A stretch of DNA of 62,345 nt, the filler included, from Bipalium vagum (lineage: Eukaryota): NCBI GenBank assembly GCA_037834085.1. It is 3 parts of 3 records of this genome, joined end to end, with 100 filler letters (N's around TTAATTAATTAA, not from the genome) between each part and the next. Parts side by side here need not be neighbours in the genome. Positions count along the whole stretch, not along the records: positions 1 to 23,813 come from JBBMKC010206155.1; 2 more parts are not named here. The stretch is one strand, 5' to 3'. Shown here piece by piece: positions 3,174-23,813 of this stretch. The position numbers and the translations under genes are program-made. The first letter of the stretch is position 1. Each line of letters starts with the position of its first letter. Under the pieces are notes generated by a model. It was not told the origin of the DNA and searched no databases. It saw nothing but the letters and a program-made list of their open reading frames with translations.

Positions 3174-4499
3174 CTAATATTTACTTTTTTTGTTGAGTTG
3201 ATCCCCAAAAATCTCATTTTCCATCTGATCCAGTCGCTCGCTATCAATGAATGGAATTTTCACAACCGCGTCGGGAATAATTTTCACCAAATTGTCTTTG
3301 ACAATTGCTTTTTGATTGTTCCAGAACGAAGTTCGTTCTTTGATTCGTGTCTTTTTAAATCTGGATGAGTTGCTGGCGTTGTTGAAAAGAGATACGTGCT
3401 CTGGAACATCATTTGTGTTGCGAGACATGACAGACACTTGAACGACATTCGAGAAGATCGATGACAATTTTTGCAATTCCTCAATCATCTCGTCACCGCG
3501 CACAGTGTTGAGTTGATCGTCGTCGGAGCTGTTGTATTCGCCAGATTCGAAAAAAATGTTCCTATTCGAAGATTGCAAAGATTGAAATTTAGCCGGACAT
3601 ATTTCTTCGATTTCATCGTCCCCGGTTTCTGTATCGTCTTCGAAAGTCATAAAATCTTCTTTGGAATCATGGGAAAAGAATCCATTGGATCCCAAACCGC
3701 AGATGTTGCCACTATCCAAATTCTGATAGTGATTATTTAAATTGATCCCATCTGAAGATGGAGCGACGTTCTTAAAATCGTGATAATCAAAATTGTCTAT
3801 TGGTCTCTCGTGATTGGCTCCCACTCCACATGGGACTGTTGATGCGATTGTGGAGGTCGATGGCGGCGGCATCATTGTTGACGGCAAATAATACGGATAG
3901 TCTCCATTCATTTCCAAAGACGCGCTCATCATCGGCATCACTTGCGGAACGAGCATTACATTTTTCAAACAATCGCTTTGCGGATCGTAAATGACGTATG
4001 AATGCATATAGGAATTTGTGGAACAGTCGCCATAGTAGTAGGGAATGTTGGGACAAATGAATTCATTGAATCTTTGATTGAACTGGTTGTTTGAAATTTC
4101 AGCGGCTGACGTGGATGTGCAATGGGTGTGAGTCGATATATTGTGAGAATTGTTCGAACAAGACGTAGACGAGGAACAAGATGTAGAGGAACAGGTAGAA
4201 GAAGCAGAAGGAAAAGAATTGTGATGGAATAAAAAGTTCTTGGCTTCCAAGAAATCGTGATTACGTGAAGAGTCTTTAGATGAGTCATTAGATACCAACG
4301 GAGTGGAAATAAATCTTGGGTATGAGGTAGGATTACTGAAGTTATGCCGAGCGTCCAGAGCACCAGTATGTGATATATTGATCATGTTCCTAATAGAAGA
4401 ATTACACTGATTGGAGATGATTACATGGTTTTCCGAGAAAACGTTGGGAATGGCAGCATAGTCACTTTTCTTGGCACCGTTAACAAATTGTTGGTGGAC
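3174..4499 (-). CDS. Terminal coding exon of an uncharacterised low-complexity protein (Ser/Asn/Tyr/Pro/Met-rich, acidic tract, basic C-terminus)
   Basis: 442-codon open frame, much richer in GC than its flanks; the frame extends 38 codons upstream of the ORF-track Met to the acceptor ttcttaAG|GTCCAC. Confidence 0.85.
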   Translation of the reverse strand, partial: VHQQFVNGAKKSDYAAIPNVFSENHVIISNQCNSSIRNMINISHTGALDARHNFSNPTSYPRFISTPLVSNDSSKDSSRNHDFLEAKNFLFHHNSFPSASSTCSSTSCSSSTSCSNNSHNISTHTHCTSTSAAEISNNQFNQRFNEFICPNIPYYYGDCSTNSYMHSYVIYDPQSDCLKNVMLVPQVMPMMSASLEMNGDYPYYLPSTMMPPPSTSTIASTVPCGVGANHERPIDNFDYHDFKNVAPSSDGINLNNHYQNLDSGNICGLGSNGFFSHDSKEDFMTFEDDTETGDDEIEEICPAKFQSLQSSNRNIFFESGEYNSSDDDQLNTVRGDEMIEELQKLSSIFSNVVQVSVMSRNTNDVPEHVSLFNNASNSSRFKKTRIKERTSFWNNQKAIVKDNLVKIIPDAVVKIPFIDSERLDQMENEIFGDQLNKKSKY

Positions 4500-4884
4500 C
4501 TTAAGAAAACTTTCTCAACGCACACACACACACATAAACAGACAAACACAATTCTAATTATGTAAACAGCTTTGAAAGGCCATTATAATTAATCAAAGGT
4601 TATGAGGTTTTTCTTTGTTCAAATAAGTTTATAAAAGTTAACAGCAAAATAAAGTTTGTTAAGAGAATCTAAATGGCACAACATAAATTACCTGGGTATG
4701 TAACATAAATCAAAGCTGAAATTAAATCAAAGAAGACCAGTTTAAGGTTTAAGAATAATTTTATATCGTTTATTATTATTAAATATTATTATAAAATTAT
4801 TTTTTTATCATTGAATATGAATCTTTTTTACTATTATTTATTACTATTATTTATTACTATTATTATTTAATATTATTATTGTTA

Positions 4885-5711
4885 GTAAGTAATTTCCGGT
4901 GCATTTCTTCCAGTTCTGTACAGTTTTGGTCGGCTGCTATGGTCTCACCTGGATCTAGAGATGGAAAATGTATTACTCCACCCATAGACCACCAAACAGT
5001 GATCATTATTTTCTTTTGGTGCAAATCGGGCTTCGGCATGTGACGAGGAAGTTGAACGACATTTAACCATTGAGCTGAGCGTCGTTGATTATTATATAGT
5101 ATCCATTTTTCATCACAAGTGACAATACGATGCAAAATGGGCACATATCATTGCGGATCAGCAGGGAATTGCAATCTCCATACTTTGAAATTTTTGGAAA
5201 TTGTTCAACGAATGTGGGACTCATTTTTAGAGCTTTTTAACTTTTCTTATTGATTTCAAATGACGAGAAATGTTCATTGATGATACGCCAAATTTTCTTC
5301 AATCTTTGCCTGCAGATCACCATCATCAACAGTGGTGATTGGCATTCCACGATCTTCTCGACTATAATCATTGGAATTGAATTTTTTGTACCAACGTCTA
5401 ATGGTTATTTTTGTTTATAGCATGCAATCCAAATGCCGAATTTATGTTCCTGACAGCTTCAAATATCTTGTGGTCCAATTTCCATTCATAAAAATAAATG
5501 ATTCTTAATTCCGTCGGTGTTATGTTATTCATATTGATCGCTAAATATTTTTAAATATATTTTATTATTTAAACAAGTGATATTATAATATAAAGCAATT
5601 TCTAACCTTTAAATCGATATATCAAACTTTAATTTTCATCAATTATTACTGAAAATATGTTGCTTAGAAAAATTAGTTTTAAGTAGGAACATCTCATATG
5701 TTACAACCTAA
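4885..5711 (-). mobile_element. Truncated mariner element (5' half)
   Basis: One TIR (TA-TTAGGTTGTAACATATGAG... on the minus strand), degenerate VPH motif, IVTCDEKW, KKIMITVWW; frameshifted, with the 3' part replaced by (AAT)n. Confidence 0.85.
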
Positions 5712-6058: not shown

Positions 6059-7337
6059 TCAGGTAAAAAACTAGTTTTTTCGTTTTTTAATTAAAAACTA
6101 AACCAAGACTGAAGTTAAATTTATTTTATTAATCATAAAACATTTTTAAACAATTAATCATCCAGATATTCCCATCTTTTTCTAACTTTTTTTATATTAC
6201 TGCCTCCCATCTATTACAAGTTTATTGATCCCAGTATAACAGAAATCTCGATCTTTTGAATGAAAGAAATAAAGTACTTCATTCTTTATACCTTCGGAAC
6301 CCTTAAAATGTTTACCCGTCAAATGATTATATAATACCTGGAACAAATAAAAATCGGATGGGGCGATATCTGGACTATATGGCAGATGTTCCATTAGAAT
6401 CCACTTCAATTCCTGAATAACCTTCAATGTCTTCATTGATTTGTGAGGCTTGGTATTATCTTGGTGGAAAATCACTTGTTTTCAGCTTCTCAAACTGCTC
6501 TGGTTTTCCTTCATAATAGCTTGAACTCTTAGCGTACCACAATAGACATTAGAATTAATGGTTTCCGCGAATTTGAGAAACTACTGATAAATAATTCCAC
6601 GAGAATCCCAACAAATGCATAAAAGAACCTTGTTTCGTGTAAGGTTGCGTTTTTCAATTTTTGTGGAGGCTCTCCTTTTAACGACCACGATCTTCGCCTG
6701 GTTATGTTGTCATGATAGATCCACTTTTCATGGCAAGTGACTTTCCGGTCGAGAAAAGGATCATTTCGGTTTCTTTCGTGAAGTCTTTAACAAATTTCAA
6801 TGCGATCCAACTTGATTTTTTCAACTAGTTGGTAGGGAACCCATTTGTCGAGTTTACAAGTGAATCCTAATGCTTTCAGTCATTTTCTTATGGCTGTTTC
6901 GTTTATATTTAACTCAGAAGAGATTTGTTTAGCACTAATTGATCTATTTTGGTCAAGAAAGTCCATAGTTTGATAGTACTCCAATTCTTTTGGCCTTCCA
7001 GACCTCTCTTTCTCTTCCAATGAAAAATCGCCACTAATGTATTTTTTTAAACTAATTTTGCATTGCTCCTTCACCAAGCACCTCGTTAAGTTTTGAGACA
7101 GTTTCGTTTGTGCTTGGGTGTTTTTTCCATTCGTAATAAATAATTGCTCGAATTTTTGATTTGTCCAGCGAACTTTTGGAGCACCTATTCTAGAGGATAA
7201 TGGTTAATAACATTAATTATATAGTAAATTTGAACAAACTAAAACGAAGAAATTTTAAATCGGTAGATAAATGAGAATCTCAGGGGCTAACAAATTTAAA
7301 CAACTGAAAATACGAAAAAACTTAGTTCGTTACCTGA
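6059..7337 (-). mobile_element. Full-length but decayed mariner element, 1279 bp
   Basis: TIRs TCAGGTAA...TTTTTTCGT at both ends with TA target duplications; RSGRP, WVPY, TCHEKW (first catalytic D changed to H), HQDN and YSPDIAPSDF motifs. Confidence 0.92.
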
Positions 7338-7479: not shown

Positions 7480-8105
7480 AGGTTATCGAGAAATAAACCA
7501 GGAAACCTTAGATTTAAAAAATCTGTCCAAGAGAATGAAATAAATCCAGGTTTTCTTGACATGCTTTCTTTCGCTTTTGTTGCATCTCCACTGTCAAAAA
7601 TCGTGGGACAAATCTGTTACATAATTTTCTGACTCCAATACTCTCTAGAATGTTCTGCACAGTCTTCTTGCTTAAATTAAGTTTAGTCAAAAGTTCTCTA
7701 TGTGTAATTTGTCTCTCTTCTTTGACGATTATCTTTAATTTTTATAATTTTCGTCCCCCAGTTTTTATAGTTCGTCCATCTTTTTATTCGTCACACACAT
7801 TGTTCCTGCCACAGGAAAACTCTCTGATCCAATTGTATACACTTCCTTTGCTTGGTGCTTTATTTCCTTATGTTTTCTCCAGTTGAAAAATAATTTCCTT
7901 CTTTTCTGTCTTCCTCAAAAGCAAAAATCGTATGACGCTTCAGAATTCCATTTCATGACATATTGTCGTACCTAATGTCAACAACATCTTACCACTTAAA
8001 ACAAATATCATAATATTTACCTATTCTATTAATTAATTTTTAAAATTTCATAAAATTCTTAATTATATTTGTTTACGAGTCTAAGTACTTTTTATCCACA
8101 CCAAG
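7480..8105 (-). mobile_element. Degenerate mariner remnant
   Basis: TIR-like TA-CTTGGTGTGGATAAAAAGTAC; decayed N-terminus (MEF*SVIRFL) and VPR motif. Confidence 0.55.
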
Positions 8106-10038: not shown

Positions 10039-11314
10039 CACCCTCCATTCCAAAAATAACCGAACTTTAAAAAAGGTAACCAATATTTATTTTTAAAAAA
10101 TAAATTTTTATTAATCAATTTAATCGCCTTCTGCATCAATACACACATTTTCACGCACTAACAAGTTGTCAAAAGACTTCTCTATGTCCTTTTTGGTAAT
10201 GATCTTTAGGACATCAGTCACCGTACTATTGATGGCCTCAACCGACTCGTGAAGCTTTCCTTTGATCGTCAAATGAAGCTTTGGGAGCAGATAGTAGTCG
10301 CACGGAGCGAGATCAGGTGAATAGGGTGAATTTTGCATAGGAATAATCTGATTTTTGACCAAAAATTCAGTCACAACTCTTGACCTATGTGAAGGTGCAT
10401 TATCGTGAAAAAAATCAAACTGTCGTTTTCTCGATATTCTGGCCACACAAGGCGAATTCTTGCCAGCAATCGTTTTATGACATCTAAGTAAGTCTCCTGT
10501 GATTGTTTGGCCGGGTGGAACAAACTCTTTGTGGATAATTCCTTTGGAATCGTAAAAGCAAATCAGCATAACCTTCACTTTTGATTTATCCAAACGAGAT
10601 TTTTTCGGTTTTCCCTTATCCAGCGATCTTCATTCAGCACTCTGCCGCTTTGTTTCTGGTTCATACCTAAAACGCCACGTCTCGTCACCGGTATCAATCG
10701 TTTTCAAGAAGTTTGGGTCCTTCCGAGCACTTTTAATGATGTCTTTGCTATGATCAATTCGAGCCATTCTTTGGTCTTCGGTGAGTTTGTATGGAACAAA
10801 CCGCGAATTAACCTTACGAGAACAAAATATCTCGGTCAAAATGCGGTATACAGTTGTTTGAAGAATGCCTAATTCAATTTCAATCAATTTCACCGATGAT
10901 TTTTTAATATTTTTGATAAACTCACGCATTTTTTCAATGTTCTCTTCCGATAATTCAGTTTTTGGACGGCCTGATCTTTCGTCGTCATTCATGGTTTCCC
11001 TACTCGATTCGAATCACTTGAACCACTCGTATACTTGCGTACGACATAGACATCCATCACCATATGCAGATTGTAGCATTTGATGTATTTACACAGAAGT
11101 CAATTGCAGCTCTTTGTTTGAAATTCATTTTCGAGAATTATTAAACAGGCTAACAAAAACGTAGCAATTACTCACGTTGCTTATATCCTAATGTCATGAA
11201 ATTTGTATCTGTTGTCAATGAATGACCACGTTATCTAGGGGTATATTGTTAAAATAAATGGCTCTTGTAGTACTATTTTTTTAAAAAGTTCGGTTATTTT
11301 TGAAATGAAGAGTG
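10039..11314 (-). mobile_element. Full-length mariner element, 1276 bp, transposase frameshifted
   Basis: About 30-bp TIRs CAC(C/T)CT(C/T)CATT(C/T)CAAAAATAACCGAACTTT with TA duplications; RSGRP, FVPYKL, TGDETW, HDNAPSH and YSPDLAPCDY motifs. Confidence 0.95.
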
Positions 11315-16393: not shown

Positions 16394-16516
16394 TCAAAAA
16401 AGAATTTGACTTTGATCCAGCTCGACAAGCTTTCTAATTAAATCTGGATTGATATTATACTCAAAATCACACAATATCTGATGATAATCTTCTCGTTCCG
16501 GAATGCAAGGTATATC
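16394..16516 (-). CDS. BET exon 10: C-terminal motif-like end (DIPCIPEREDYHQILCDFEYNINPDLIRKLVELDQSQILF*)
   Basis: Follows a 60-nt intron ending tttctag; 41 codons to TGA; QILCDFEYNI resembles the BRD4 CTM ending DLLSIFEENL. Confidence 0.75.
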   Translation of the reverse strand, partial: DIPCIPEREDYHQILCDFEYNINPDLIRKLVELDQSQILF

Positions 16517-19500
16517 CTAGAAAATAAAAAATCGCAGTTTTAATAATGAACAAAAATGACACGTTTTTGTTATTACTAAAGCTCTTTGTTTGCTATCATT
16601 GATGGACAATTCCTTCATTCTGATCATGTCTTCTTCCCGTTTAAGGTTCTCAGAAAAATGCTGTTGTTTCCTGGTCTCGTTTAAAGCCTGCATCTTAAGA
16701 ATATGTTGCATCTTTTGCTCTTCATCCTGCTTCAACCTCACCATCCGCAGTTCTTCTTCTTGTTTCTTTACATTTTCAAGAGCTTGTGCATTCTGTACAA
16801 TTTGTCTCAGGCCTTCACTCAGCTGTTTCGTGTTGGTATTGCTATACATCGGATGAGGTATGGAAAGACTTTTCGGTTTCAAAGAAGAGTTGTTGATCAA
16901 ATTTGTCTTGTTGTCTGCACTGGATGATTTGTTCCAAAGCGCTTTGTAGATCGGTCGTTTTGGGGTGTTGTCCTTTTTGTCGTCATCTTCCTCTTTATCG
17001 GACGAGTCTGATGAATCAGTCAGTCGCGATTCTCCATTGGTATTATTGGTACTGGCGACAAACCTTTCTGATTGATTTAATTGATTCAGTGGTTGGGCTT
17101 CGATAAATGGTTTTATTGATTCGGCTGGAATTTCGTTGCTGACACTCGCAGAAACGGTCTGACAACTCGGTTCGATTGTGATTGTGCTGCTGTTGATGGT
17201 TGTTGTCGTGGTGGTGCTTGTGGCAGTTGGAGCTGAACTTTTCATCAGGTTGTTGAAAAACTCATTGTCCGACGACGACGAAGCTGAAATGGCAAAAACC
17301 GCCGAAAAAGGTGAATTATTGACAAGCACAGAAACTCAAACAAAAACCAACCATCTGAATTCGAGTCTGATGCATCACTGTCCGACGAGTCTGAAGAGTG
17401 GGAATCACTGTCACCGTCATTATTCCCGACTAAAGACGATTTAAAAATGCCCCAACAGCCGATAGATGTAACGAGTTTGAAAGTTATGAATACAAACACA
17501 ATTATATTTCATTTCACATGCTGCTACTATTTTTTTGTTCAAACCCCACATCACAATCATTCATATAATCAAAAAATATTTCGATCAAGTAAAAACTAAT
17601 TTTTCTTTTCATTATTCAATTCCCGATAATATTTATCAAAACAAAATCAAAGGTAAGGTAAATGTAATAAATTAATTGAAAAAATTTATTGATAAACTTT
17701 AAAAATCGATATTTTGTGAAATTACAATTTTAGGCAGAAAATAGAACGATTATTTTAGTTAATTATGACTTTTTTAAAAAAATATTTCATGAATGAATGA
17801 AATATTTATGAGATAACATTTTAAAGTTTTTTATTTGTTAATTTATTTTTAAAAATTGCATTTTATGAAATAAAAGACTGGTTACTTTGTAAATCCAGTT
17901 GTAATTTTAAATATATAAATATCATTATTTTAATAAAATAACATTTAAAACAAAAAATATCTGTAATAAAATAGATTTTTTATGAAAATATTCAAAATGT
18001 TAATAAATACTAGATACAGACTACTTTTAGAGTTAACCAAGTTTTTAAAAATGAAAATGTTATTAATATTCATTATTGGTCGAAAAAATCAGATTGTGAT
18101 TTTTAAAAATTTCGATTGAAAAATCGAACTTAAAAGGAAAAATAACCAATAAGTTTTGAAGTCAAATAAATAAATAATATTGGAAAAAATAATCTTTTCA
18201 CAACAATAATTTTAATATAAGGTAAAAAGAAAACTATTATTAATTTAAATTTTTTTAAAATCAATAAATCAATATTTATTTAAAAAATTCCCAAGAATAA
18301 TAAAAATAACATACGAAAATTCAAAAAATGTGCCTTATAAAATTGATTCGAAGATTTACCGATTACATACATACACAGAAAAACAAGGTCGAAAAACAAA
18401 TTGATTTTTATATAGATTCCACATCAGGAAGAGAAAAGAGAGATGAAGTTGGGAATTAGAGAGAGGGAGAAACGGAAACGGAAAAGAAAGAAAAATAAGA
18501 AGCAATGTGAAATGAAATATCGCGCTTTCGACAACTTTCGTCTCGTTATCATAACCACCAATACCTGGTTGGCCAGTCGCCGTTGCTGAGGTAGACAGCG
18601 CACCCTTTTTCAACAGCCTCTCCCGCTTTTTCTCAAGATATCTGTCGGCAAACTCCCTCAAACTGTGCAACGTCACTAGTTTCATCGTGTGGAAATCAAT
18701 CTCGCATTCGCCGTCTAATGATTGCACGTCCTCGGTTTTCTTGTAAATATTGAGAATCTTTTCCGAACATTTCTCTCCCAATTGGCGCAGGTCCTGACTC
18801 AGTTGCATCCGGTCTTCGATTGTGAACTGTCTCAACGCTGGTTTCGATGATCCTCCCTGTCCCGTTGCTATGGCTGTTGTCATTACTTGATCTGAAAGGA
18901 TAATAATAATAAACCAAAAATATATTTATCAACGTACCTCTCTGTTGTATTAGTGGCGACGGTGTTGGTTCCGACATCATTTTATAGAGACCATTTAACG
19001 TTGCTGGCTTCAATTTCAATAGGCTGACCGAAACAACGTTCTGGTTCTCCGATTTGTTAATGAACTCTCTGACCTTCATCCCCATTTCCACCGATAGAGA
19101 TCCGATCCAAGTTTTGATTTCTTTCAAACGAGCGTTAAAAGCTTCTTTGTTTTTCGTCGATTTGGCTAAATTATAATAATATAACCTAATTTTCAAACTT
19201 GTTATAAAAATTTAACAAAATAAAATCGTTTTTTTTTATAATCAATATGAAATTAAAAAATATATTTTAGTATAATGTTCGAGAAAAAAAATTAGTCAAT
19301 GATATTTGGTAGTCTATCCTTTAAGAAACTCATTTAATAAATCAATGGATTCACGAAAAAATATATATTACCAATTGTAACAGATTGAGTTTTATTGATT
19401 GATTAATTATTCAAAGTTATTTAACAAAAAAATAAAATTAACTGTTTAATTATTAATCAATCGCAGTATTACCACTCATTATTAATCAATTATTTCGTGA

Positions 19501-22500
19501 TTAATGAATATCGATTTTTACTAAAAACATAATAAAAAAATGAATAAAACAGATTATCGATTTTTCTCTAACTGAAAGTAATATGAGGAAATAAATAGTG
19601 AACAATGAAGCGATTGTTTATGTTATGATTAGAAAATCAAAAAACTAAATTCCTTTATACTTACATATTTCATTTGGACTAGTTCCGGTTCCAACTCCGG
19701 TTCCAGTGGATTTCACCATGGTTTTTGAATAATCCATTGTCATTGTTGAATCAGAAAAGTTCGTCGACATCGATTCACGAGATTGACTGTGGTGTTGTGA
19801 TGGTGGCGGGGGCAACAAGTGACTAGTGTTACTGTTGCCAATGGTGCTGTTGTTGTTGATATGATTTCTAAAACGATATCGTAAAAAAATCAAAGACAAT
19901 ATCTTTTATTACAGTGTTCTTTTTGGAATCGATGTGCCACCAGCAACGCTACTCGTGGTGGAACTGAAAGCGGTCGCGGCGACTAATAACGTTGATCCCG
20001 TGATGGTTTTGTTCAACGAACTGACGATGGCAGAGGAAGAATTGGACGACGAGGACGATGCAGAGATAGAGGAGGAAATGTCGGCGGATGATGTTTTGAA
20101 TGGTTCTTCGTTTGACTGAGATTTTGGTTGTTTTATAGATCGTTTTGTGGTCGTGTCCATCGACCGATGATGATCCGATGTTTTGCCTGCGTCCGGTTTC
20201 TGAACCAAACCTGATTTCGGAGATTTGGACATAACACTTCTGCTTTCCAGCAATTTCAAAGACTGATTCGATTGGGTCTTTGTGAAATTATCGATGGTTT
20301 TAGAACCAGATGATTTCGATTTCATTAACGATTGCTTTGGTGAAAAAGTTTTCGACGAAGACGACGAAGACTCGTAACCGACCAATGTCGATGTCGATAA
20401 TGGTGGTTTTTTGGCAATCTGTTCTGTCATTCCCACAATTGATTGGGACATGTGGTTTTGGTGCACGGTTGCTTTGAAAAGTTTTATTAGATCCGACGCA
20501 TTGAGATGATCGATCGACTGCTGAATTTCTCTGTTTTGTTTGATGATATATTCGTGCTGAAATCAAAAAAACAATTATAGTTTTTAGTGAAGCGAAAGGT
20601 GAAATAGATTAAAGTTGAAAAGTAACGAAATTGAAATTTAATTAAACGAATTGTGAATTTTATGTTTATAAATTATAATGATCGATTATTATTAATATAT
20701 TATAATAAATTAAAATTATTATTACTACCGTCAATAATTATGTGTAAAATCAAAACCAAGGCGAAAATATATTATGTATCATTCCAAAATAATAAAAATT
20801 AACAAACAGTTACGTAACTCCTCTCCATGCAAACTATTTGTGGAACAATTTAAAGATTTAAATTGAATTGAATGAAATAATTCTATAAAAAACGTGTACC
20901 ATAGAATCAATTTCGGATTGTCGCTTCAAGATTTTTTGGAGCAGTGGTTGCAAATCGTCACAATTTGGCGGCGCCATTGCCTGAGACGACGATAACGATG
21001 ATGACAGTGGAGTTTTCTTTGTTACGTTATTAGAGAAAGCGTTGTGATACAGTTCCAGGAACACGGCTTCCAGCAACTTTCCACACCGGTTGACCTCGTG
21101 TCCCTCGGGGTTGTATAGGTAACAGTTGCGGAAGATTTGTCGAACGTCATCACCGAACTGCTCATTTGTCTGATAGCAGCCGTCGGATAGCTTCCGCTTC
21201 ACCGTTCCGAGATCCATTGGCTTCTTAACAACGTCGAAGTAATCATGTAGTTTCAGTCCCTCAACATCTACGGGCTCGAGAAAATATCGATTGATATTCT
21301 AAATATAGATTTCATCTAGGTCAAAAAATTTCACAAACAGTGTGTTTTAAAATTAATCGATAAAGTAAAAAAAATCGATATTTTTAAATATATTTAATAA
21401 AATATGATTATTTTTACACGGATAATTAATGATAAGTAAGGAAATTCTTTAACGAAAACATAATTTTATTGATTTTTTTTTCAAATTATCATCTAGATAA
21501 ATGTAATTTCGAAAAATTCAAAAAAATGAAATCAATAAAGAACCATGGCCTTTTTTAATCAGTGTAAAAAAATTGAAAAATCTCTCGTTATTATTTAAAT
21601 GATCAATATTCAAAGACAAAATATATCTATATAAAATATTTTTAATTTTATTGATTTTCTAATCAACTATCGTTATCTTCTCATCCCTCAATTGTAAAAT
21701 AATCAATAAAACAGAAATGGGGAAAAATTAATTTTAATATCAAATTATAACTAATTCAGAACAAGCTTTTCAGAATAAAAGATCTTTTATTTATTTATCG
21801 AAAGTCAATATTTCTAAAAATAACCTCAATCTCAATAAATAACCATTTTCAAATTGAAATTGGAAAAATAAAAAGATCGAATAATCTATCTAATGACTTA
21901 TTATTAAAAGATATAGACAAAAAAACGAAGCCCGACTCACGTTATATTTTTTCGAAATCAAACTCAAAATTATGTGTTTGCAAGCCTTGAGATCGATTCC
22001 GAACTTGGTCTTCTTCGCAGACGGCGGCTCTTCCCGAATCAATAAATTTCCGGCTTCTGATCGACTTCGCTTTTGACTGGAAACAGCACTTTTACCCATT
22101 TGAGCAATCGGCGTTCCCGATCCGCCATTAAGAACCACACTTGGCTTGGCATTGTTGTTGTGCAGTTTGATCGATTTCCGTTTCTTCACCCGGTTGGTCT
22201 TGGGAGTATGGAAAGCCGTATCGATCCCATAATGCTCGGGCACGGGTAAATCGGCCATTTTGCGCTTGAATAGGTTCTCCAACTTCAGAGCCATCTCCAC
22301 GTACAGTGAACCAGGCTCGTTGAAGATATAACAATTCCGAAATATGTCCAGAAAATCATTCTTGCATTCGTTGGCTGTCTGGTAGATTTGCTTATCCAGC
22401 TTCATTTTGATAGTGCCCAAATCCATGGGGCATTTGATGAGCTTAGGGTATTGCTAGCAGAAAAATCAGAACATTTTTTTGTTTTGCCAAACTTACAGGT

Positions 22501-22619
22501 ACATGGAGAGCTTCGGGGTTGACTGGGATTTTGAAAGGTTCGGAGTAAGAATTTCTCAGAAGTACATTTATGACGTTTCGTTTAATGTACAATAACTGAT
22601 TGGTGTAAGGAAGCTCCAT
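16394..22619 (-). CDS. BRD4: BET-family double-bromodomain protein (BRD2/3/4/T, fs(1)h-like), long form; 10 coding exons: 22619-22497, 22453-21941, 21298-20900, 20556-19913, 19867-19665, 19165-18938, 18891-18565, 17429-17352, 17283-16577, 16516-16394 (3345 nt, 1114 aa)
   Basis: BD1 (TNQLLY...PMDLGTIK...NCYIFN), BD2 (PVDVEGLKLHDY...PMDLGTVK...NCYLYNPEGHEV), coiled coil, ET domain (QLSQDL...EIDFHTMKLVTLHSL), SEED-like tract and a C-terminal motif-like end. All nine introns are GT-AG with compatible phases. The symbol indicates the family; one-to-one orthology is not established. Confidence 0.9.
16577..17283 (-). CDS. BET exon 9: C-terminal low-complexity and coiled-coil region
   Basis: tttcag acceptor; long open frame (ORF 16517..17329) with a charged helix (KKQEEELRMVRLKQDEEQK); donor GTAATA. 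Confidence 0.85.
17352..17429 (-). CDS. BET exon 8: SEED-like Ser/Asp tract
   Basis: tttag acceptor; GNNDGDSDSHSSDSSDSDASDSNSD; 78 nt, phase 1-1. Confidence 0.8.
18565..18891 (-). CDS. BET exon 7: canonical ET domain
   Basis: Follows a 46-nt intron; RQFTIEDRMQLSQDLRQL...ECEIDFHTMKLVTLHSLREFADRYLEKK; donor ccag|GTATTG. Confidence 0.88.
18938..19165 (-). CDS. BET exon 6: putative degenerate ET-like domain
   Basis: Symmetric phase 1-1 exon of 228 nt; EIKTWIGSLSVEMGMKVREFINKSE...VSVSLLKLKPATLNGL resembles the ET consensus. Confidence 0.8.
19665..19867 (-). CDS. BET exon 5: low-complexity region (PPPPSQHH)
   Basis: Follows a 45-nt intron; ttttag acceptor, GTAAGT donor, phases 2 to 1. Confidence 0.85.
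19913..20556 (-). CDS. BET exon 4: coiled coil and Ser/Lys/Thr-rich low-complexity region
   Basis: Acceptor tttcag; HEYIIKQNREIQQSIDHL...; phase-2 donor GTAATA at 19912. Confidence 0.85.
20900..21298 (-). CDS. BET exon 3: BD2 and start of coiled coil
   Basis: Acceptor tttag; NINRYFLEPVDVEGLKLHDYFDVVKKPMDL...YNPEGHEV; donor GTACAC at 20899; 399 nt, phase 0-0. Confidence 0.92.
21941..22453 (-). CDS. BET exon 2: rest of BD1, basic linker/NLS (PPSAKKTK), start of BD2
   Basis: Follows a 43-nt intron ending ctgctag; QYPKLIKCPMDLGTIK...; donor GTGAGT at 21940. Confidence 0.92.
22497..22619 (-). CDS. BET exon 1: start of BD1 (MELPYTNQLLYIKRNV...EPFKIPVNPEALHVP)
   Basis: ATG at 22619, donor GTAAGT at 22496; an acceptor (acgacag) lies 15 nt upstream of the ATG, so upstream exon(s), non-coding or in frame, probably exist. 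Confidence 0.85.
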
Positions 22620-23277: not shown

Positions 23278-23720
23278 TACACAACCGTCCATAAAAAGGT
23301 TACCACCTTAAAATTTTCAATAATTTAGCATTTAAATTGCTATAAAACAAAAATTTTAAAGATAATCAACAACGGTTTTTTTTGCATGTTATGGAATGTT
23401 TATTTACAAATGCAATACATTAAAATATGTTCAGTATTTTATAGATCCACCACACATCTGATTACTTCCTTCAAACGAGTAAGTTTATTCCAAATCATGT
23501 TACTGATGAATTCTCGTGGTATTGCTTCTAATTCTGACCTGACCAGTTTCCATAGATTTTTTTTTTGTTATTAATACCTTTTCTATGAATTCTTCTTTCA
23601 ATGTAGTCCCATCAATATTCAACCGGATATAAATCTGGATATTTTGGTGGCCAATCCAGGGTAACAGGTATCAAGTTTTGTTCCAGCCACATTTTAATAT
23701 GCCATACATCTACATATACG
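23278..23720 (-). mobile_element. Tc1-like transposon 3' remnant
   Basis: Minus-strand WPPKYPDLYPVE (degenerate SPDLNPIE) and a TIR-like end near 23280. Confidence 0.65.
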
Positions 23721-23813
23721 TCCATATAAACGTATATCAAAAAGTCAGTGCGTTTTTATTGCACAGTTTAAAAACATTTATTTAATATAACAAAAACAAT
23801 ATTAATCTATTAT

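What the first reader, a model, noticed from the sequence alone, without database searches (positions are those of the whole stretch)
18565..19165. BET protein with an apparent tandem duplication of the ET domain
Seen: exon 6 (phase 1-1) encodes ARLKEIKTWIGSLSVEMGMKVREFINKSENQNVVSVSLLKLKPATLNGLYKMM. It aligns by eye along the whole ET pattern (BRD4 [28 protein letters not shown]...IEIDFETLKPSTLREL), including a near-exact LKPxTL. The next exon, also phase 1-1, holds a canonical ET. Established: BET proteins have two bromodomains and one ET, which recruits partners such as NSD3, JMJD6, CHD4 and MLV integrase through the acidic EIDF strand. Inference: exon duplication produced a BD-BD-ET-ET architecture. 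The extra copy has lost the acidic EIDF residues (VSVSL), so it may bind different partners or act as a scaffold.
Basis: partly seen in the sequence, partly recalled or inferred. Interest (0 to 1): 0.8.

Follow-up and report, generated by a model that had tools for sequence, protein, structure and literature searches.

The report
BET gene with a second, diverged ET-like domain
A fast-evolving chromatin-reader (BET) gene of an unidentified AT-rich animal carries, just before its normal ET partner-docking domain, a conserved extra exon that most likely encodes a second, strongly diverged and positively charged ET-like domain, an arrangement I did not find described, though no RNA data confirm it.

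Summary
On the minus strand, exon 6 (19165-18938, phase 1-1) encodes the quoted peptide. A 46-nt intron separates it from a phase 1-1 exon (18891-18565) that holds a canonical ET domain (Pfam BET 34.9 bits; BRD4/2/3 ET in PDB at about 1e-5), downstream of two bromodomains.

The only relative found (Logan contig L001) has the same two exons. Exon 6 is 67% identical and under purifying selection (dN/dS about 0.1), while the flanking linkers are about 31-34% identical.

The evidence that exon 6 is ET-like is mixed but net positive.
- **For:** The orthologue hits Pfam BET at E 0.033 across profile positions 9-63 of 64. The AlphaFold model of the window peptide (pLDDT 72) ranks BRD3/BRD2 ET, AF9 AHD and Taf14 ET as the top 5 of 48,161 chains.
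- **Against:** the window peptide has no Pfam, PDB-sequence or BLASTP hit. The orthologue's model (pLDDT 61) found no ET.

The acidic strand is replaced (VVSVSL) and the domain is basic (pI about 10). No RNA runs exist, so joint inclusion of both exons is untested.

Verdict: probable new variant of a known kind, of moderate interest.

The parts
22497..22619 (-). Exon 1: start codon at 22619-22617 and the N-terminal half of bromodomain 1. Followed by a 43-nt intron.
   Evidence: Reading of the sequence and the ORF table. Donor is CCT|gtaagt.
21941..22453 (-). Exon 2: the rest of bromodomain 1 (Asn of the acetyl-lysine pocket kept in the ...IFNEPG motif), a basic linker and the start of bromodomain 2.
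   Evidence: Pfam Bromodomain PF00439, 38.1 bits. Splice sites read.
20900..21298 (-). Exon 3: bromodomain 2 (YN motif kept) and a short helical motif after it.
   Evidence: Pfam Bromodomain, 39.5 bits. Splice sites read.
19913..20556 (-). Exon 4: Ser-rich linker. Only its first ~25 residues are conserved in the relative.
   Evidence: 34% identity with many gaps to L001. No Pfam family. Splice sites read.
19665..19867 (-). Exon 5: poorly conserved linker. Preceded by a 45-nt intron. Ends in phase 1 with donor T|gtaagt.
   Evidence: 31% identity over 35 residues.
18938..19165 (-). Exon 6 (the finding): phase 1-1, 76 codons. Encodes the basic, ET-like three-helix module, here called ET'.
   Evidence: Conserved in L001 at 67% identity, dN 0.24 against saturated dS. 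hhalign P about 5e-4. Orthologue hits Pfam BET at E 0.033. AF2 pLDDT 71.8 with helices 4-22, 25-39 and 53-64. ET, AHD and Taf14 ET are the top 5 of 48,161 chains. BRD4 ET Z 7.1.
18892..18937 (-). Intron 6, 46 nt (gtacgt...cctttcag).
   Evidence: Introns of 43 and 45 nt elsewhere in the gene show that this size is normal here.
18565..18891 (-). Exon 7: phase 1-1, canonical ET domain with the acidic ECEIDF strand.
   Evidence: Pfam BET 34.9 bits. PDB BRD4/2/3 ET at 1e-5 to 8e-4. Own-genome scan 35.7 bits.
17352..17429 (-). Exon 8: phase 1-1, Ser/Asp-rich acidic stretch, as follows the ET domain in other BET proteins.
   Evidence: Reading. The frame joins exon 7 and exon 9.
16577..17283 (-). Exon 9: C-terminal low-complexity and Lys/Glu-rich helical region. 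A likely further exon starts at 16516; the end of the gene was not determined.
   Evidence: No Pfam family above threshold.

Best explanation
The window holds a lineage-specific, fast-evolving BET paralogue on the minus strand. Its most likely product reads bromodomain - bromodomain - linker - ET' - ET - acidic tail.

Exon 6 encodes ET', a roughly 60-residue three-helix module. It descends from an ET domain through an old tandem duplication of the phase 1-1 ET exon. It keeps the ET scaffold: helix 2 ending in a conserved Glu, an alternating hydrophobic strand, and the L-K-P-x-T-L start of helix 3. It has swapped the acidic strand residues (E-x-E-x-D becomes V-S-S) and turned basic overall.

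Shown:
- The exon structure.
- Conservation and purifying selection in two species.
- A canonical ET next door.
- Weak but above-chance profile similarity in the correct register.
- An ET-like AlphaFold model for one of the two sequences.

Inferred:
- Both exons are spliced into one mRNA.
- The bromodomains tether the protein to acetylated chromatin.
- The canonical ET docks Lys-rich amphipathic peptides by strand addition.
- ET' offers a second groove that can no longer pair with Lys-rich motifs, so it recruits a different class of partner or packs against the acidic ET or tail.
For: Exon is real and selected:
- Identical exon phases and GT..AG sites in the window and in L001.
- 67% identity with no gaps in the core. 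dN 0.24 against saturated dS (pS 0.71).
- Flanking linker exons are only 31-34% identical.

Sequence similarity to ET:
- hhalign A1 against A4 gives P 5e-4 to 7e-4 over the strand and helix 3. The real score is 22.9; column shuffles reach at most 19.0 (0 of 400).
- The L001 orthologue hits Pfam BET at E 0.033, 14.7 bits, residues 15-64 onto profile positions 9-63 of 64.
- Smith-Waterman z is 5.3 and 5.1 against ET unit 4 of L013, and 3.0-5.5 against canonical ETs L002 and L004.

Predicted structure:
- AF2 model of the window peptide has pLDDT 71.8 and three helices.
- Foldseek's top 3 of 350,542 chains are BRD4 ET.
- In VIA-align over 48,161 chains, ranks 1-5 are BRD3 ET (Z 6.6, rmsd 2.6, 62 aligned), AF9 AHD (6.6), BRD2 ET (6.4) and Taf14 ET twice (5.5).
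- BRD4 ET 2jns gives Z 7.1 over 68 residues.

Context:
- ET exons of paralogues L002 and L006 also begin in phase 1, about 9 residues before the domain, as exon 6 does.
- Another gene of this genome (L013) is a tandem array of four phase 1-1 ET-like exons, so tandem ET-exon duplication happens in this lineage.
- Introns of 43-46 nt are normal in this gene, so the 46-nt intron does not force exclusion.
Against: - The window peptide has no Pfam family at E <= 10.
- It has no PDB sequence hit. A profile search of PDB gave only a chance-level F-BAR hit.
- It has no BLASTP alignment to exon 7 or to L013 unit 4.
- A scan of the window's own genome with the Pfam BET model did not flag exon 6.
- A narrow ET HMM gave only P 0.05 (window) and 0.017 (L001) against shuffles.
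- hhalign against the narrow alignment gave P 0.06.
- The second AlphaFold model, with the orthologue as target, was poor (pLDDT 60.6). It had four helices and no ET among its top 50 matches.
- Foldseek E-values are not significant (0.29 or worse), and Z 6-7 is common for small helical models.
- Only two sequences exist, so the profiles are thin.
- No RNA data were found.
Confidence: 0.6

Rival explanations
1. Exon 6 and exon 7 are alternative exons, either mutually exclusive or cassette. The gene would then make isoforms with either the basic ET' or the acidic ET, never BD-BD-ET'-ET.
For: Both exons are phase 1-1 and multiples of 3 (228 and 327 nt). They are adjacent, and skipping either one keeps the frame. 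Tandem-duplicated exons are the classic source of mutually exclusive splicing (established knowledge). No RNA data exclude it.
Against: The exons differ in length (76 against 109 codons) and share no detectable similarity, unlike typical mutually exclusive pairs. The 46-nt intron is not unusually short for this gene, which has introns of 43 and 45 nt, and it is 62 nt in the relative, so no steric block is implied. The L013 array shows that consecutive ET-like exons must all be joined to give an open frame.
Confidence: 0.15
2. Exon 6 encodes a conserved, lineage-specific helical module that is not derived from ET. The resemblance would rest on a short LKPxTL-like motif and a generic three-helix arrangement.
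For: No hit of the window peptide to Pfam BET, to PDB sequences or to its neighbour ET. The second AF2 model found only generic helical repeats. Z 6-7 and Foldseek E 0.3 are within the range seen for unrelated small helical models (notes). Most of the hhalign signal comes from 25 columns.
Against: The five best of 48,161 chains all belong to the small ET/AHD fold group. The orthologue's Pfam BET match spans the whole profile, not just the motif. No column shuffle reached the hhalign score. The position directly before a true ET, the same exon phase and the same acceptor offset as ET exons would all be coincidences.
Confidence: 0.2
3. Exon 6 is not an exon: it is an intronic open frame or a decayed pseudo-exon.
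For: No transcript evidence. Gene callers on the relative's contig read through it without splicing.
Against: It is 67% identical at the protein level with saturated synonymous sites and dN/dS about 0.1. Splice sites and phases are preserved in two species of very different base composition. The intron sequences around it are not alignable.
Confidence: 0.03

Closest known systems
ET (extra-terminal) domain of BET proteins (Pfam PF17035; BRD2, BRD3, BRD4, fs(1)h)
   Same: Size is about 60 residues. Predicted three helices with a long helix 2-helix 3 loop. Conserved Glu at the end of helix 2. Alternating hydrophobic residues in the loop strand (V-x-V-x-L against I-x-I-x-F). L-K-P-x-T-L at the start of helix 3. 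Location C-terminal to two bromodomains. Phase 1 acceptor about 9 residues before the domain.
   Different: Below the Pfam cut-off (none for the window, 14.7 bits for the orthologue, against 24.5). The acidic strand residues that pair with Lys of NSD3, CHD4 and MLV-integrase peptides are replaced by V/S/S(N). Net charge is +6 to +7 (pI about 10), against -3 to -7 (pI 4.5-5.1) for canonical ETs of the same genome. It is present as an extra copy beside a canonical ET.
AF9/ENL AHD and Taf14 ET domains (ET-like fold outside BET proteins)
   Same: They rank beside the BET ETs in the structure search (Z 6.6 and 5.5). Like ET', they are ET-fold modules with little sequence similarity to BRD4 ET that bind partners by strand addition (established knowledge).
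   Different: They follow a YEATS domain, not bromodomains. No sequence similarity to ET' was detected.
ET-only four-unit gene of the same genome (G000:C32367, L013 3236-4390)
   Same: Tandem phase 1-1 exons, each encoding one ET-like unit and split by 41-56-nt introns. Its units also lack most acidic strand residues (SSIDL, ATIDL). Unit 4 is the closest single sequence to ET' (z 5.3).
   Different: No bromodomains were seen on that contig. It has four units instead of two. Two of its units reach Pfam BET (25.1 and 17.2 bits), whereas the window's ET' does not.
Motif B / BID region of BET proteins (between BD2 and ET)
   Same: It lies between bromodomain 2 and ET and is predicted helical.
   Different: By my recollection of the literature, motif B/BID is a Lys-rich or coiled-coil segment directly after BD2. 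Here a motif-B-like helix sits at the end of exon 3 and the start of exon 4. ET' is a separate globular-looking module about 290 residues further on.

Membership tests
BET family (the gene as a whole) | Two tandem bromodomains with the pocket Asn | tested here: met
   Pfam PF00439 at 38.1 and 39.5 bits on exons 2 and 3. FN and YN motifs read.
BET family (the gene as a whole) | An ET domain C-terminal to the bromodomains | tested here: met
   Exon 7: PF17035 at 34.9 bits against cut-off 24.5. BRD4 ET 2jns at 1.4e-5.
ET domain (PF17035), for exon 6 | Profile match at or above Pfam's gathering score | tested here: not met
   Window peptide: no hit at E <= 10. Orthologue: 14.7 bits, E 0.033, profile positions 9-63 of 64, below the 24.5 cut-off.
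ET domain (PF17035), for exon 6 | Profile-profile similarity in the correct register | tested here: met
   hhalign P about 5e-4; 0 of 400 column shuffles reach the score. The strand and helix 3 align to the same elements of ET. Against the narrow ET alignment P is only 0.06.
ET domain (PF17035), for exon 6 | Three-helix ET fold with a helix 2-helix 3 loop strand | tested here: inconclusive
   Model 1 (pLDDT 71.8): ET, AHD and Taf14 ET are ranks 1-5 of 48,161 chains, with Z 5.5-6.6. BRD4 ET gives Z 7.1. Model 2 (orthologue, pLDDT 60.6): no ET in the top 50.
ET domain (PF17035), for exon 6 | Acidic E-I-E-I-D-F strand that pairs with basic partner peptides | tested here: not met
   The aligned residues are V-V-S-V-S-L (window) and V-V-S-V-N-L (L001). 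The hydrophobic positions are kept and the acidic ones are lost.
ET domain (PF17035), for exon 6 | Binding of partner peptides in the helix 1/helix 2 groove | not testable with these tools
   Needs pull-downs or NMR titrations.
Mutually exclusive tandem exons | Adjacent exons of the same phase with recognisable mutual similarity and similar length | tested here: not met
   The phase (1-1) is the same. The lengths are 228 and 327 nt. There is no protein or DNA similarity.
Mutually exclusive tandem exons | Transcripts contain one or the other exon, never both | not testable with these tools
   No RNA run holds the locus. The only holder is the DNA source run.

The most novel reading that the evidence does not exclude
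In this lineage the phase 1-1 ET exon behaves as a duplicating module. It has produced a BET reader with two ET-fold modules of opposite charge (a basic ET' next to an acidic ET). It has also produced a separate bromodomain-less protein made of four ET-like units.

The basic ET' would be a new specificity class of ET fold. It would recognise acidic or phosphorylated strand motifs, or fold back on the protein's own acidic ET or Ser/Asp tail as an autoregulatory switch. It would not bind the Lys-rich motifs bound by all characterised ET domains.
Probability: 0.25. Interest if true: 0.6.

Novelty: new variant of a known kind. Interest (0 to 1): 0.45.

Why it matters
As far as I know, every characterised BET protein has a single ET domain, which is the hub that recruits NSD3, JMJD6, CHD4 and retroviral integrases. 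Two full-text searches found no description of a BET protein with tandem ET domains.

A natural BD-BD-ET'-ET protein, with a charge-inverted copy kept under purifying selection, would show that the ET scaffold can be retuned to other peptide classes. It would be a natural experiment on what the acidic strand contributes.

The ET-only four-unit gene in the same genome suggests a wider, unexplored expansion of ET modules.

The limits are real. The organism is unidentified, only two species carry the exon, the homology signal is weak, and there is no expression evidence.

Tried and rejected
- **Pfam on the window's exon-6 peptide:** nothing at E <= 10.
- **phmmer and profile search against PDB sequences:** nothing, or chance hits to a Cdc15 F-BAR and PP2A B56.
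- **BLASTP of exon 6** against exon 7 and against L013 unit 4: nothing.
- **phmmer of exon 6 against 1.84 billion representative proteins:** one true relative only (P0001). The other two hits are low-complexity or repeat proteins.
- **Word searches with the ET' region and with the ET exon:** only the same contig's products, P0001 and P0004. The alignment could not be deepened.
- **Own-genome search with the ET' profile:** no paralogue. The three weak hits (E 1.5-5) are junk or mariner sequence.
- **RNA evidence:** no RNA run was found. The one holder is the DNA source, and laying it only confirmed the contiguity of the assembly.
- **ESM Atlas:** unavailable on four tries.
- **Replicate AlphaFold model of the orthologue:** low confidence and uninformative.
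- **DNA repeats between the two exons:** none.
- **Motif B/BID as an explanation for exon 6:** rejected on position and composition.
- **Organism:** it could not be identified with the tools, because names are coded.
- **Joined spliced protein:** All searches were exon by exon, by reference.
Full report
**What is in the sequence**

The piece is AT-rich (GC 16-38% per kb) and carries a multi-exon gene on the minus strand.

Reading the minus strand gives this gene model:

| Exon | Coordinates |
|---|---|
| 1 | 22619-22497 (ATG at 22619) |
| 2 | 22453-21941 |
| 3 | 21298-20900 |
| 4 | 20556-19913 |
| 5 | 19867-19665 |
| 6 | 19165-18938 |
| 7 | 18891-18565 |
| 8 | 17429-17352 |
| 9 | 17283-16577 |
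| 10 (probable) | from 16516 |

- The introns are 43, 642, 343, 45, 499, 46, 1135, 68 and 60 nt. All have GT..AG ends and T-rich (t/c)ag acceptors.
- Pfam finds bromodomains on exons 2 and 3 (38.1 and 39.5 bits) and the BET/ET family on exon 7 (34.9 bits, cut-off 24.5).
- Exon 7 also matches the solved ET domains of BRD4, BRD2 and BRD3 at 1e-5 to 8e-4.
Both exon 6 and exon 7 are phase 1-1.

**Is exon 6 a real exon?**

- No RNA run holds the locus. The single holder is a DNA run that is probably the source of the assembly. The evidence is therefore comparative.
- A phmmer scan of 1.84 billion representative proteins with the 75-residue exon-6 peptide found one true relative, P0001 (E 5e-22, 71% identity).
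- P0001 comes from a 1984-nt Logan contig, L001. That contig comes from a species with much higher GC3 (0.68 against 0.49).
- L001 has the same layout: a linker exon, a ~58-nt intron, the exon-6 homologue (792-1013, phase 1-1), a 62-nt intron, and the ET exon (from 1076), with the same splice phases.
- Exon 6 is 67% identical and gap-free through residue 63. Its synonymous sites are saturated (pS 0.71) and dN is 0.24, so dN/dS is about 0.1.
- The ET exon is more constrained still (dN 0.09).
- The linker exons 4 and 5 are only 34% and 31% identical, with many gaps.
- Exon 6 is thus a conserved island under purifying selection. This is what a folded functional domain looks like, and it rules out an intronic accident.

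**Is it ET-like? Sequence evidence**

The direct tests were negative for the window peptide:
- No Pfam family at E <= 10.
- No PDB sequence hit.
- No BLASTP alignment to exon 7.
- A scan of the window's own genome with the Pfam BET model did not flag it.

The more sensitive tests were positive but weak:
- The orthologous peptide from L001 hits Pfam BET at E 0.033 (14.7 bits). Residues 15-64 cover profile positions 9-63 of 64, that is, the whole domain in register.
- For a family alignment I used ET domains that the own-genome scan returned. These were five canonical ones at 79-92 bits, plus the window's and L001's own ET.
- hhalign of the two-species ET' alignment against that narrow set gave only P 0.06.
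- Adding the diverged ET-like units of a second gene (L008/L013) raised this to P 5e-4 to 7e-4.
- In my own control, 400 column shuffles of the query scored 9.4 +/- 1.85 (max 19.0) against 22.9 for the real alignment.
- Smith-Waterman scores with 1000 shuffles gave z 5.3 and 5.1 against L013 unit 4. They gave z 3.7 and 5.5 against the canonical ET of L004, and 3.0 and 3.8 against L002.
- Against the gene's own exon-7 ET, z was about 0.
- A narrow five-sequence ET HMM gave P 0.05 and 0.017. The same HMM also scores L013 unit 3 at P 0.06, although Pfam supports that unit as ET at 17.2 bits. This test is therefore simply insensitive.

**Is it ET-like? Structure evidence**

- AlphaFold2 on the two-row alignment, with the window peptide as target, gave pLDDT 71.8 and pTM 0.54. 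The helices are at 4-22, 25-39 and 53-64, with a long loop between the last two. This is the ET topology.
- Foldseek against 350,542 PDB chains put BRD4 ET at ranks 1-3 and BRD3 ET at ranks 5-6. The E-values were not significant (0.29-2.5) and TM was about 0.44.
- VIA-align against 48,161 representative chains does not depend on Foldseek. Ranks 1-5 were BRD3 ET (Z 6.6, rmsd 2.6, 62 aligned), AF9 AHD (6.6), BRD2 ET (6.4) and Taf14 ET twice (5.5).
- A second look gave BRD4 ET 2jns at Z 7.1 over 68 residues with 21% identity.
- The Z values are ordinary for a small helical model. What carries weight is that the five best of 48,161 chains all come from the one small ET/AHD fold group.
- The replicate, with the L001 peptide as target, was poor: pLDDT 60.6 and the strand region modelled as a fourth helix. 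Its search returned only generic helical repeats.
- The structural evidence therefore rests on one medium-confidence model and is not replicated.

**Context that bears on origin**

- ET exons of the canonical paralogues L002 and L006 also open in phase 1, about 9 residues before the domain, and appear to close in phase 1.
- Exon 6 opens in phase 1 at the same offset, to within one residue. This fits duplication of a phase 1-1 ET exon.
- Exon 8 is phase 1-1 too, so phase alone proves little.
- There is no DNA repeat between exons 6 and 7 and no protein similarity. Any duplication is old.
- ET' keeps the L-K-P-x-T-L signature that exon 7 has lost (MKLVTL). Exon 7 keeps the acidic ECEIDF strand that ET' has lost (VVSVSL; VVSVNL in L001).
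- Which copy is the 'extra' one cannot be said.
- Contig C32367 of the same genome carries a small gene (L013 3236-4390). It has four consecutive phase 1-1 exons split by 41-56-nt introns, and each exon encodes one ET-like unit.
- Units 4 and 3 of that gene reach Pfam BET (25.1 bits, E 1.9e-5; 17.2 bits, E 0.0056, profile positions 3-62).
- Tandem multiplication of ET exons thus demonstrably occurs in this lineage, and there the exons must be joined serially to keep an open frame.

**How it most likely works**

- *Shown:* this is a BET gene with intact pocket Asn motifs in both bromodomains and a canonical acidic ET.
- *Inferred from established BET biology:* the bromodomains bind acetylated histone tails, and the ET docks amphipathic Lys-rich peptides by adding a strand to its acidic loop. 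The PDB titles name the MLV integrase, NSD3 and CHD4 complexes.
- ET' keeps the hydrophobic face of that strand but not the acidic one. It is basic overall (net +7 and +6, pI about 10). Canonical ETs of this genome are net -3 to -7 (pI 4.5-5.1), and its neighbour ET is -1.
- My best reading, at 0.6, is a BD-BD-ET'-ET protein. Its second ET-fold module has lost affinity for Lys-rich motifs. It serves either as a docking site for another peptide class or as an intramolecular partner of the acidic ET or Ser/Asp tail.

Rivals:
- The two exons are alternative rather than joint (0.15).
- ET' is a helical module unrelated to ET (0.2).
- Exon 6 is not an exon (0.03).

The 46-nt intron does not argue for mutual exclusion. 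Introns of 43 and 45 nt must be spliced elsewhere in the same gene.

**Comparison with what is known, and novelty**

- The gene is a member of the BET family; its defining features were tested and met.
- ET' works like, and probably descends from, an ET domain. It fails two membership criteria: the Pfam cut-off and the acidic strand. I therefore file it as an ET-like variant, not as a plain PF17035 member.
- Full-text searches for two, second, tandem or duplicated ET domains, and for ET plus exon duplication, returned nothing on such an architecture.
- A search for BET-family architecture surveys listed seven papers. None has a title or abstract start pointing to tandem ETs. I did not read them in full.
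- I rate the finding a new variant of a known kind. Interest is moderate at 0.45. The architecture is unusual and selected, but it sits in an unidentified, poorly sampled lineage, the homology signal is weak, and no expression data exist.

**Limits and omissions**

Every query was a single exon given by reference.
- The organism could not be named.
- The ESM Atlas and the earlier-findings store were unavailable.
- One word search was left unused, because no remaining question depended on it.

Noticed in passing
L013 (G000:C32367) 3236-4390, + strand: A small gene with a 16-nt first exon and four consecutive phase 1-1 exons (3301-3597, 3639-3821, 3865-4119, 4176-4390), split by 41-56-nt introns. 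Each exon encodes one ET-like unit. Units 4 and 3 hit Pfam BET (25.1 and 17.2 bits). Units 1 and 2 align in the same register but only weakly. No bromodomain was seen on the contig. It looks like an ET-only tandem-array protein, flanked by integrase-like ORFs on the other strand.
   Followed up: partly
G000 loci L002-L006 (contigs C199621, C260516, C32065, C173145, C206776): The genome holds at least five further ET exons of the canonical, highly conserved type (79-92 bits), against 35.7 bits for the window's ET. The window gene is therefore a divergent extra paralogue. L002 and L003 are nearly identical over the ET segment (96%), so they may be haplotigs or a recent duplicate. GC content of these loci ranges from 27% to 40%.
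   Followed up: partly
window 4866-5147, 6200-7203, 7517-7741, 10123-11013, 23503-23755 (minus strand): Several decayed Tc1/mariner-type transposase fragments. Pfam Transposase_1 scores 34.9 bits on 10123-10629, and there is a weak HTH on 6883-7203. They fill much of the window next to the BET gene.
   Followed up: partly
window 3177-4514 (minus strand): A 446-codon open frame, rich in Ser, Asn and Thr, with no Pfam family at E <= 0.01. It may be a single-exon gene or part of a larger one.
   Followed up: no
window 20556-20480 and L001 136-220: The first ~25 residues of exon 4 (NREIxQSIDxxNxxxLIKxFKA) are conserved between the two species, while the rest of the linker is not. This may be a motif-B-like helix that continues from the end of the BD2 exon.
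   Followed up: no
window 16397-16516 (minus strand): After a 60-nt intron with good splice sites, an open frame continues the gene beyond exon 9. It has no Pfam match. The true 3' end of the gene was not determined.
   Followed up: no
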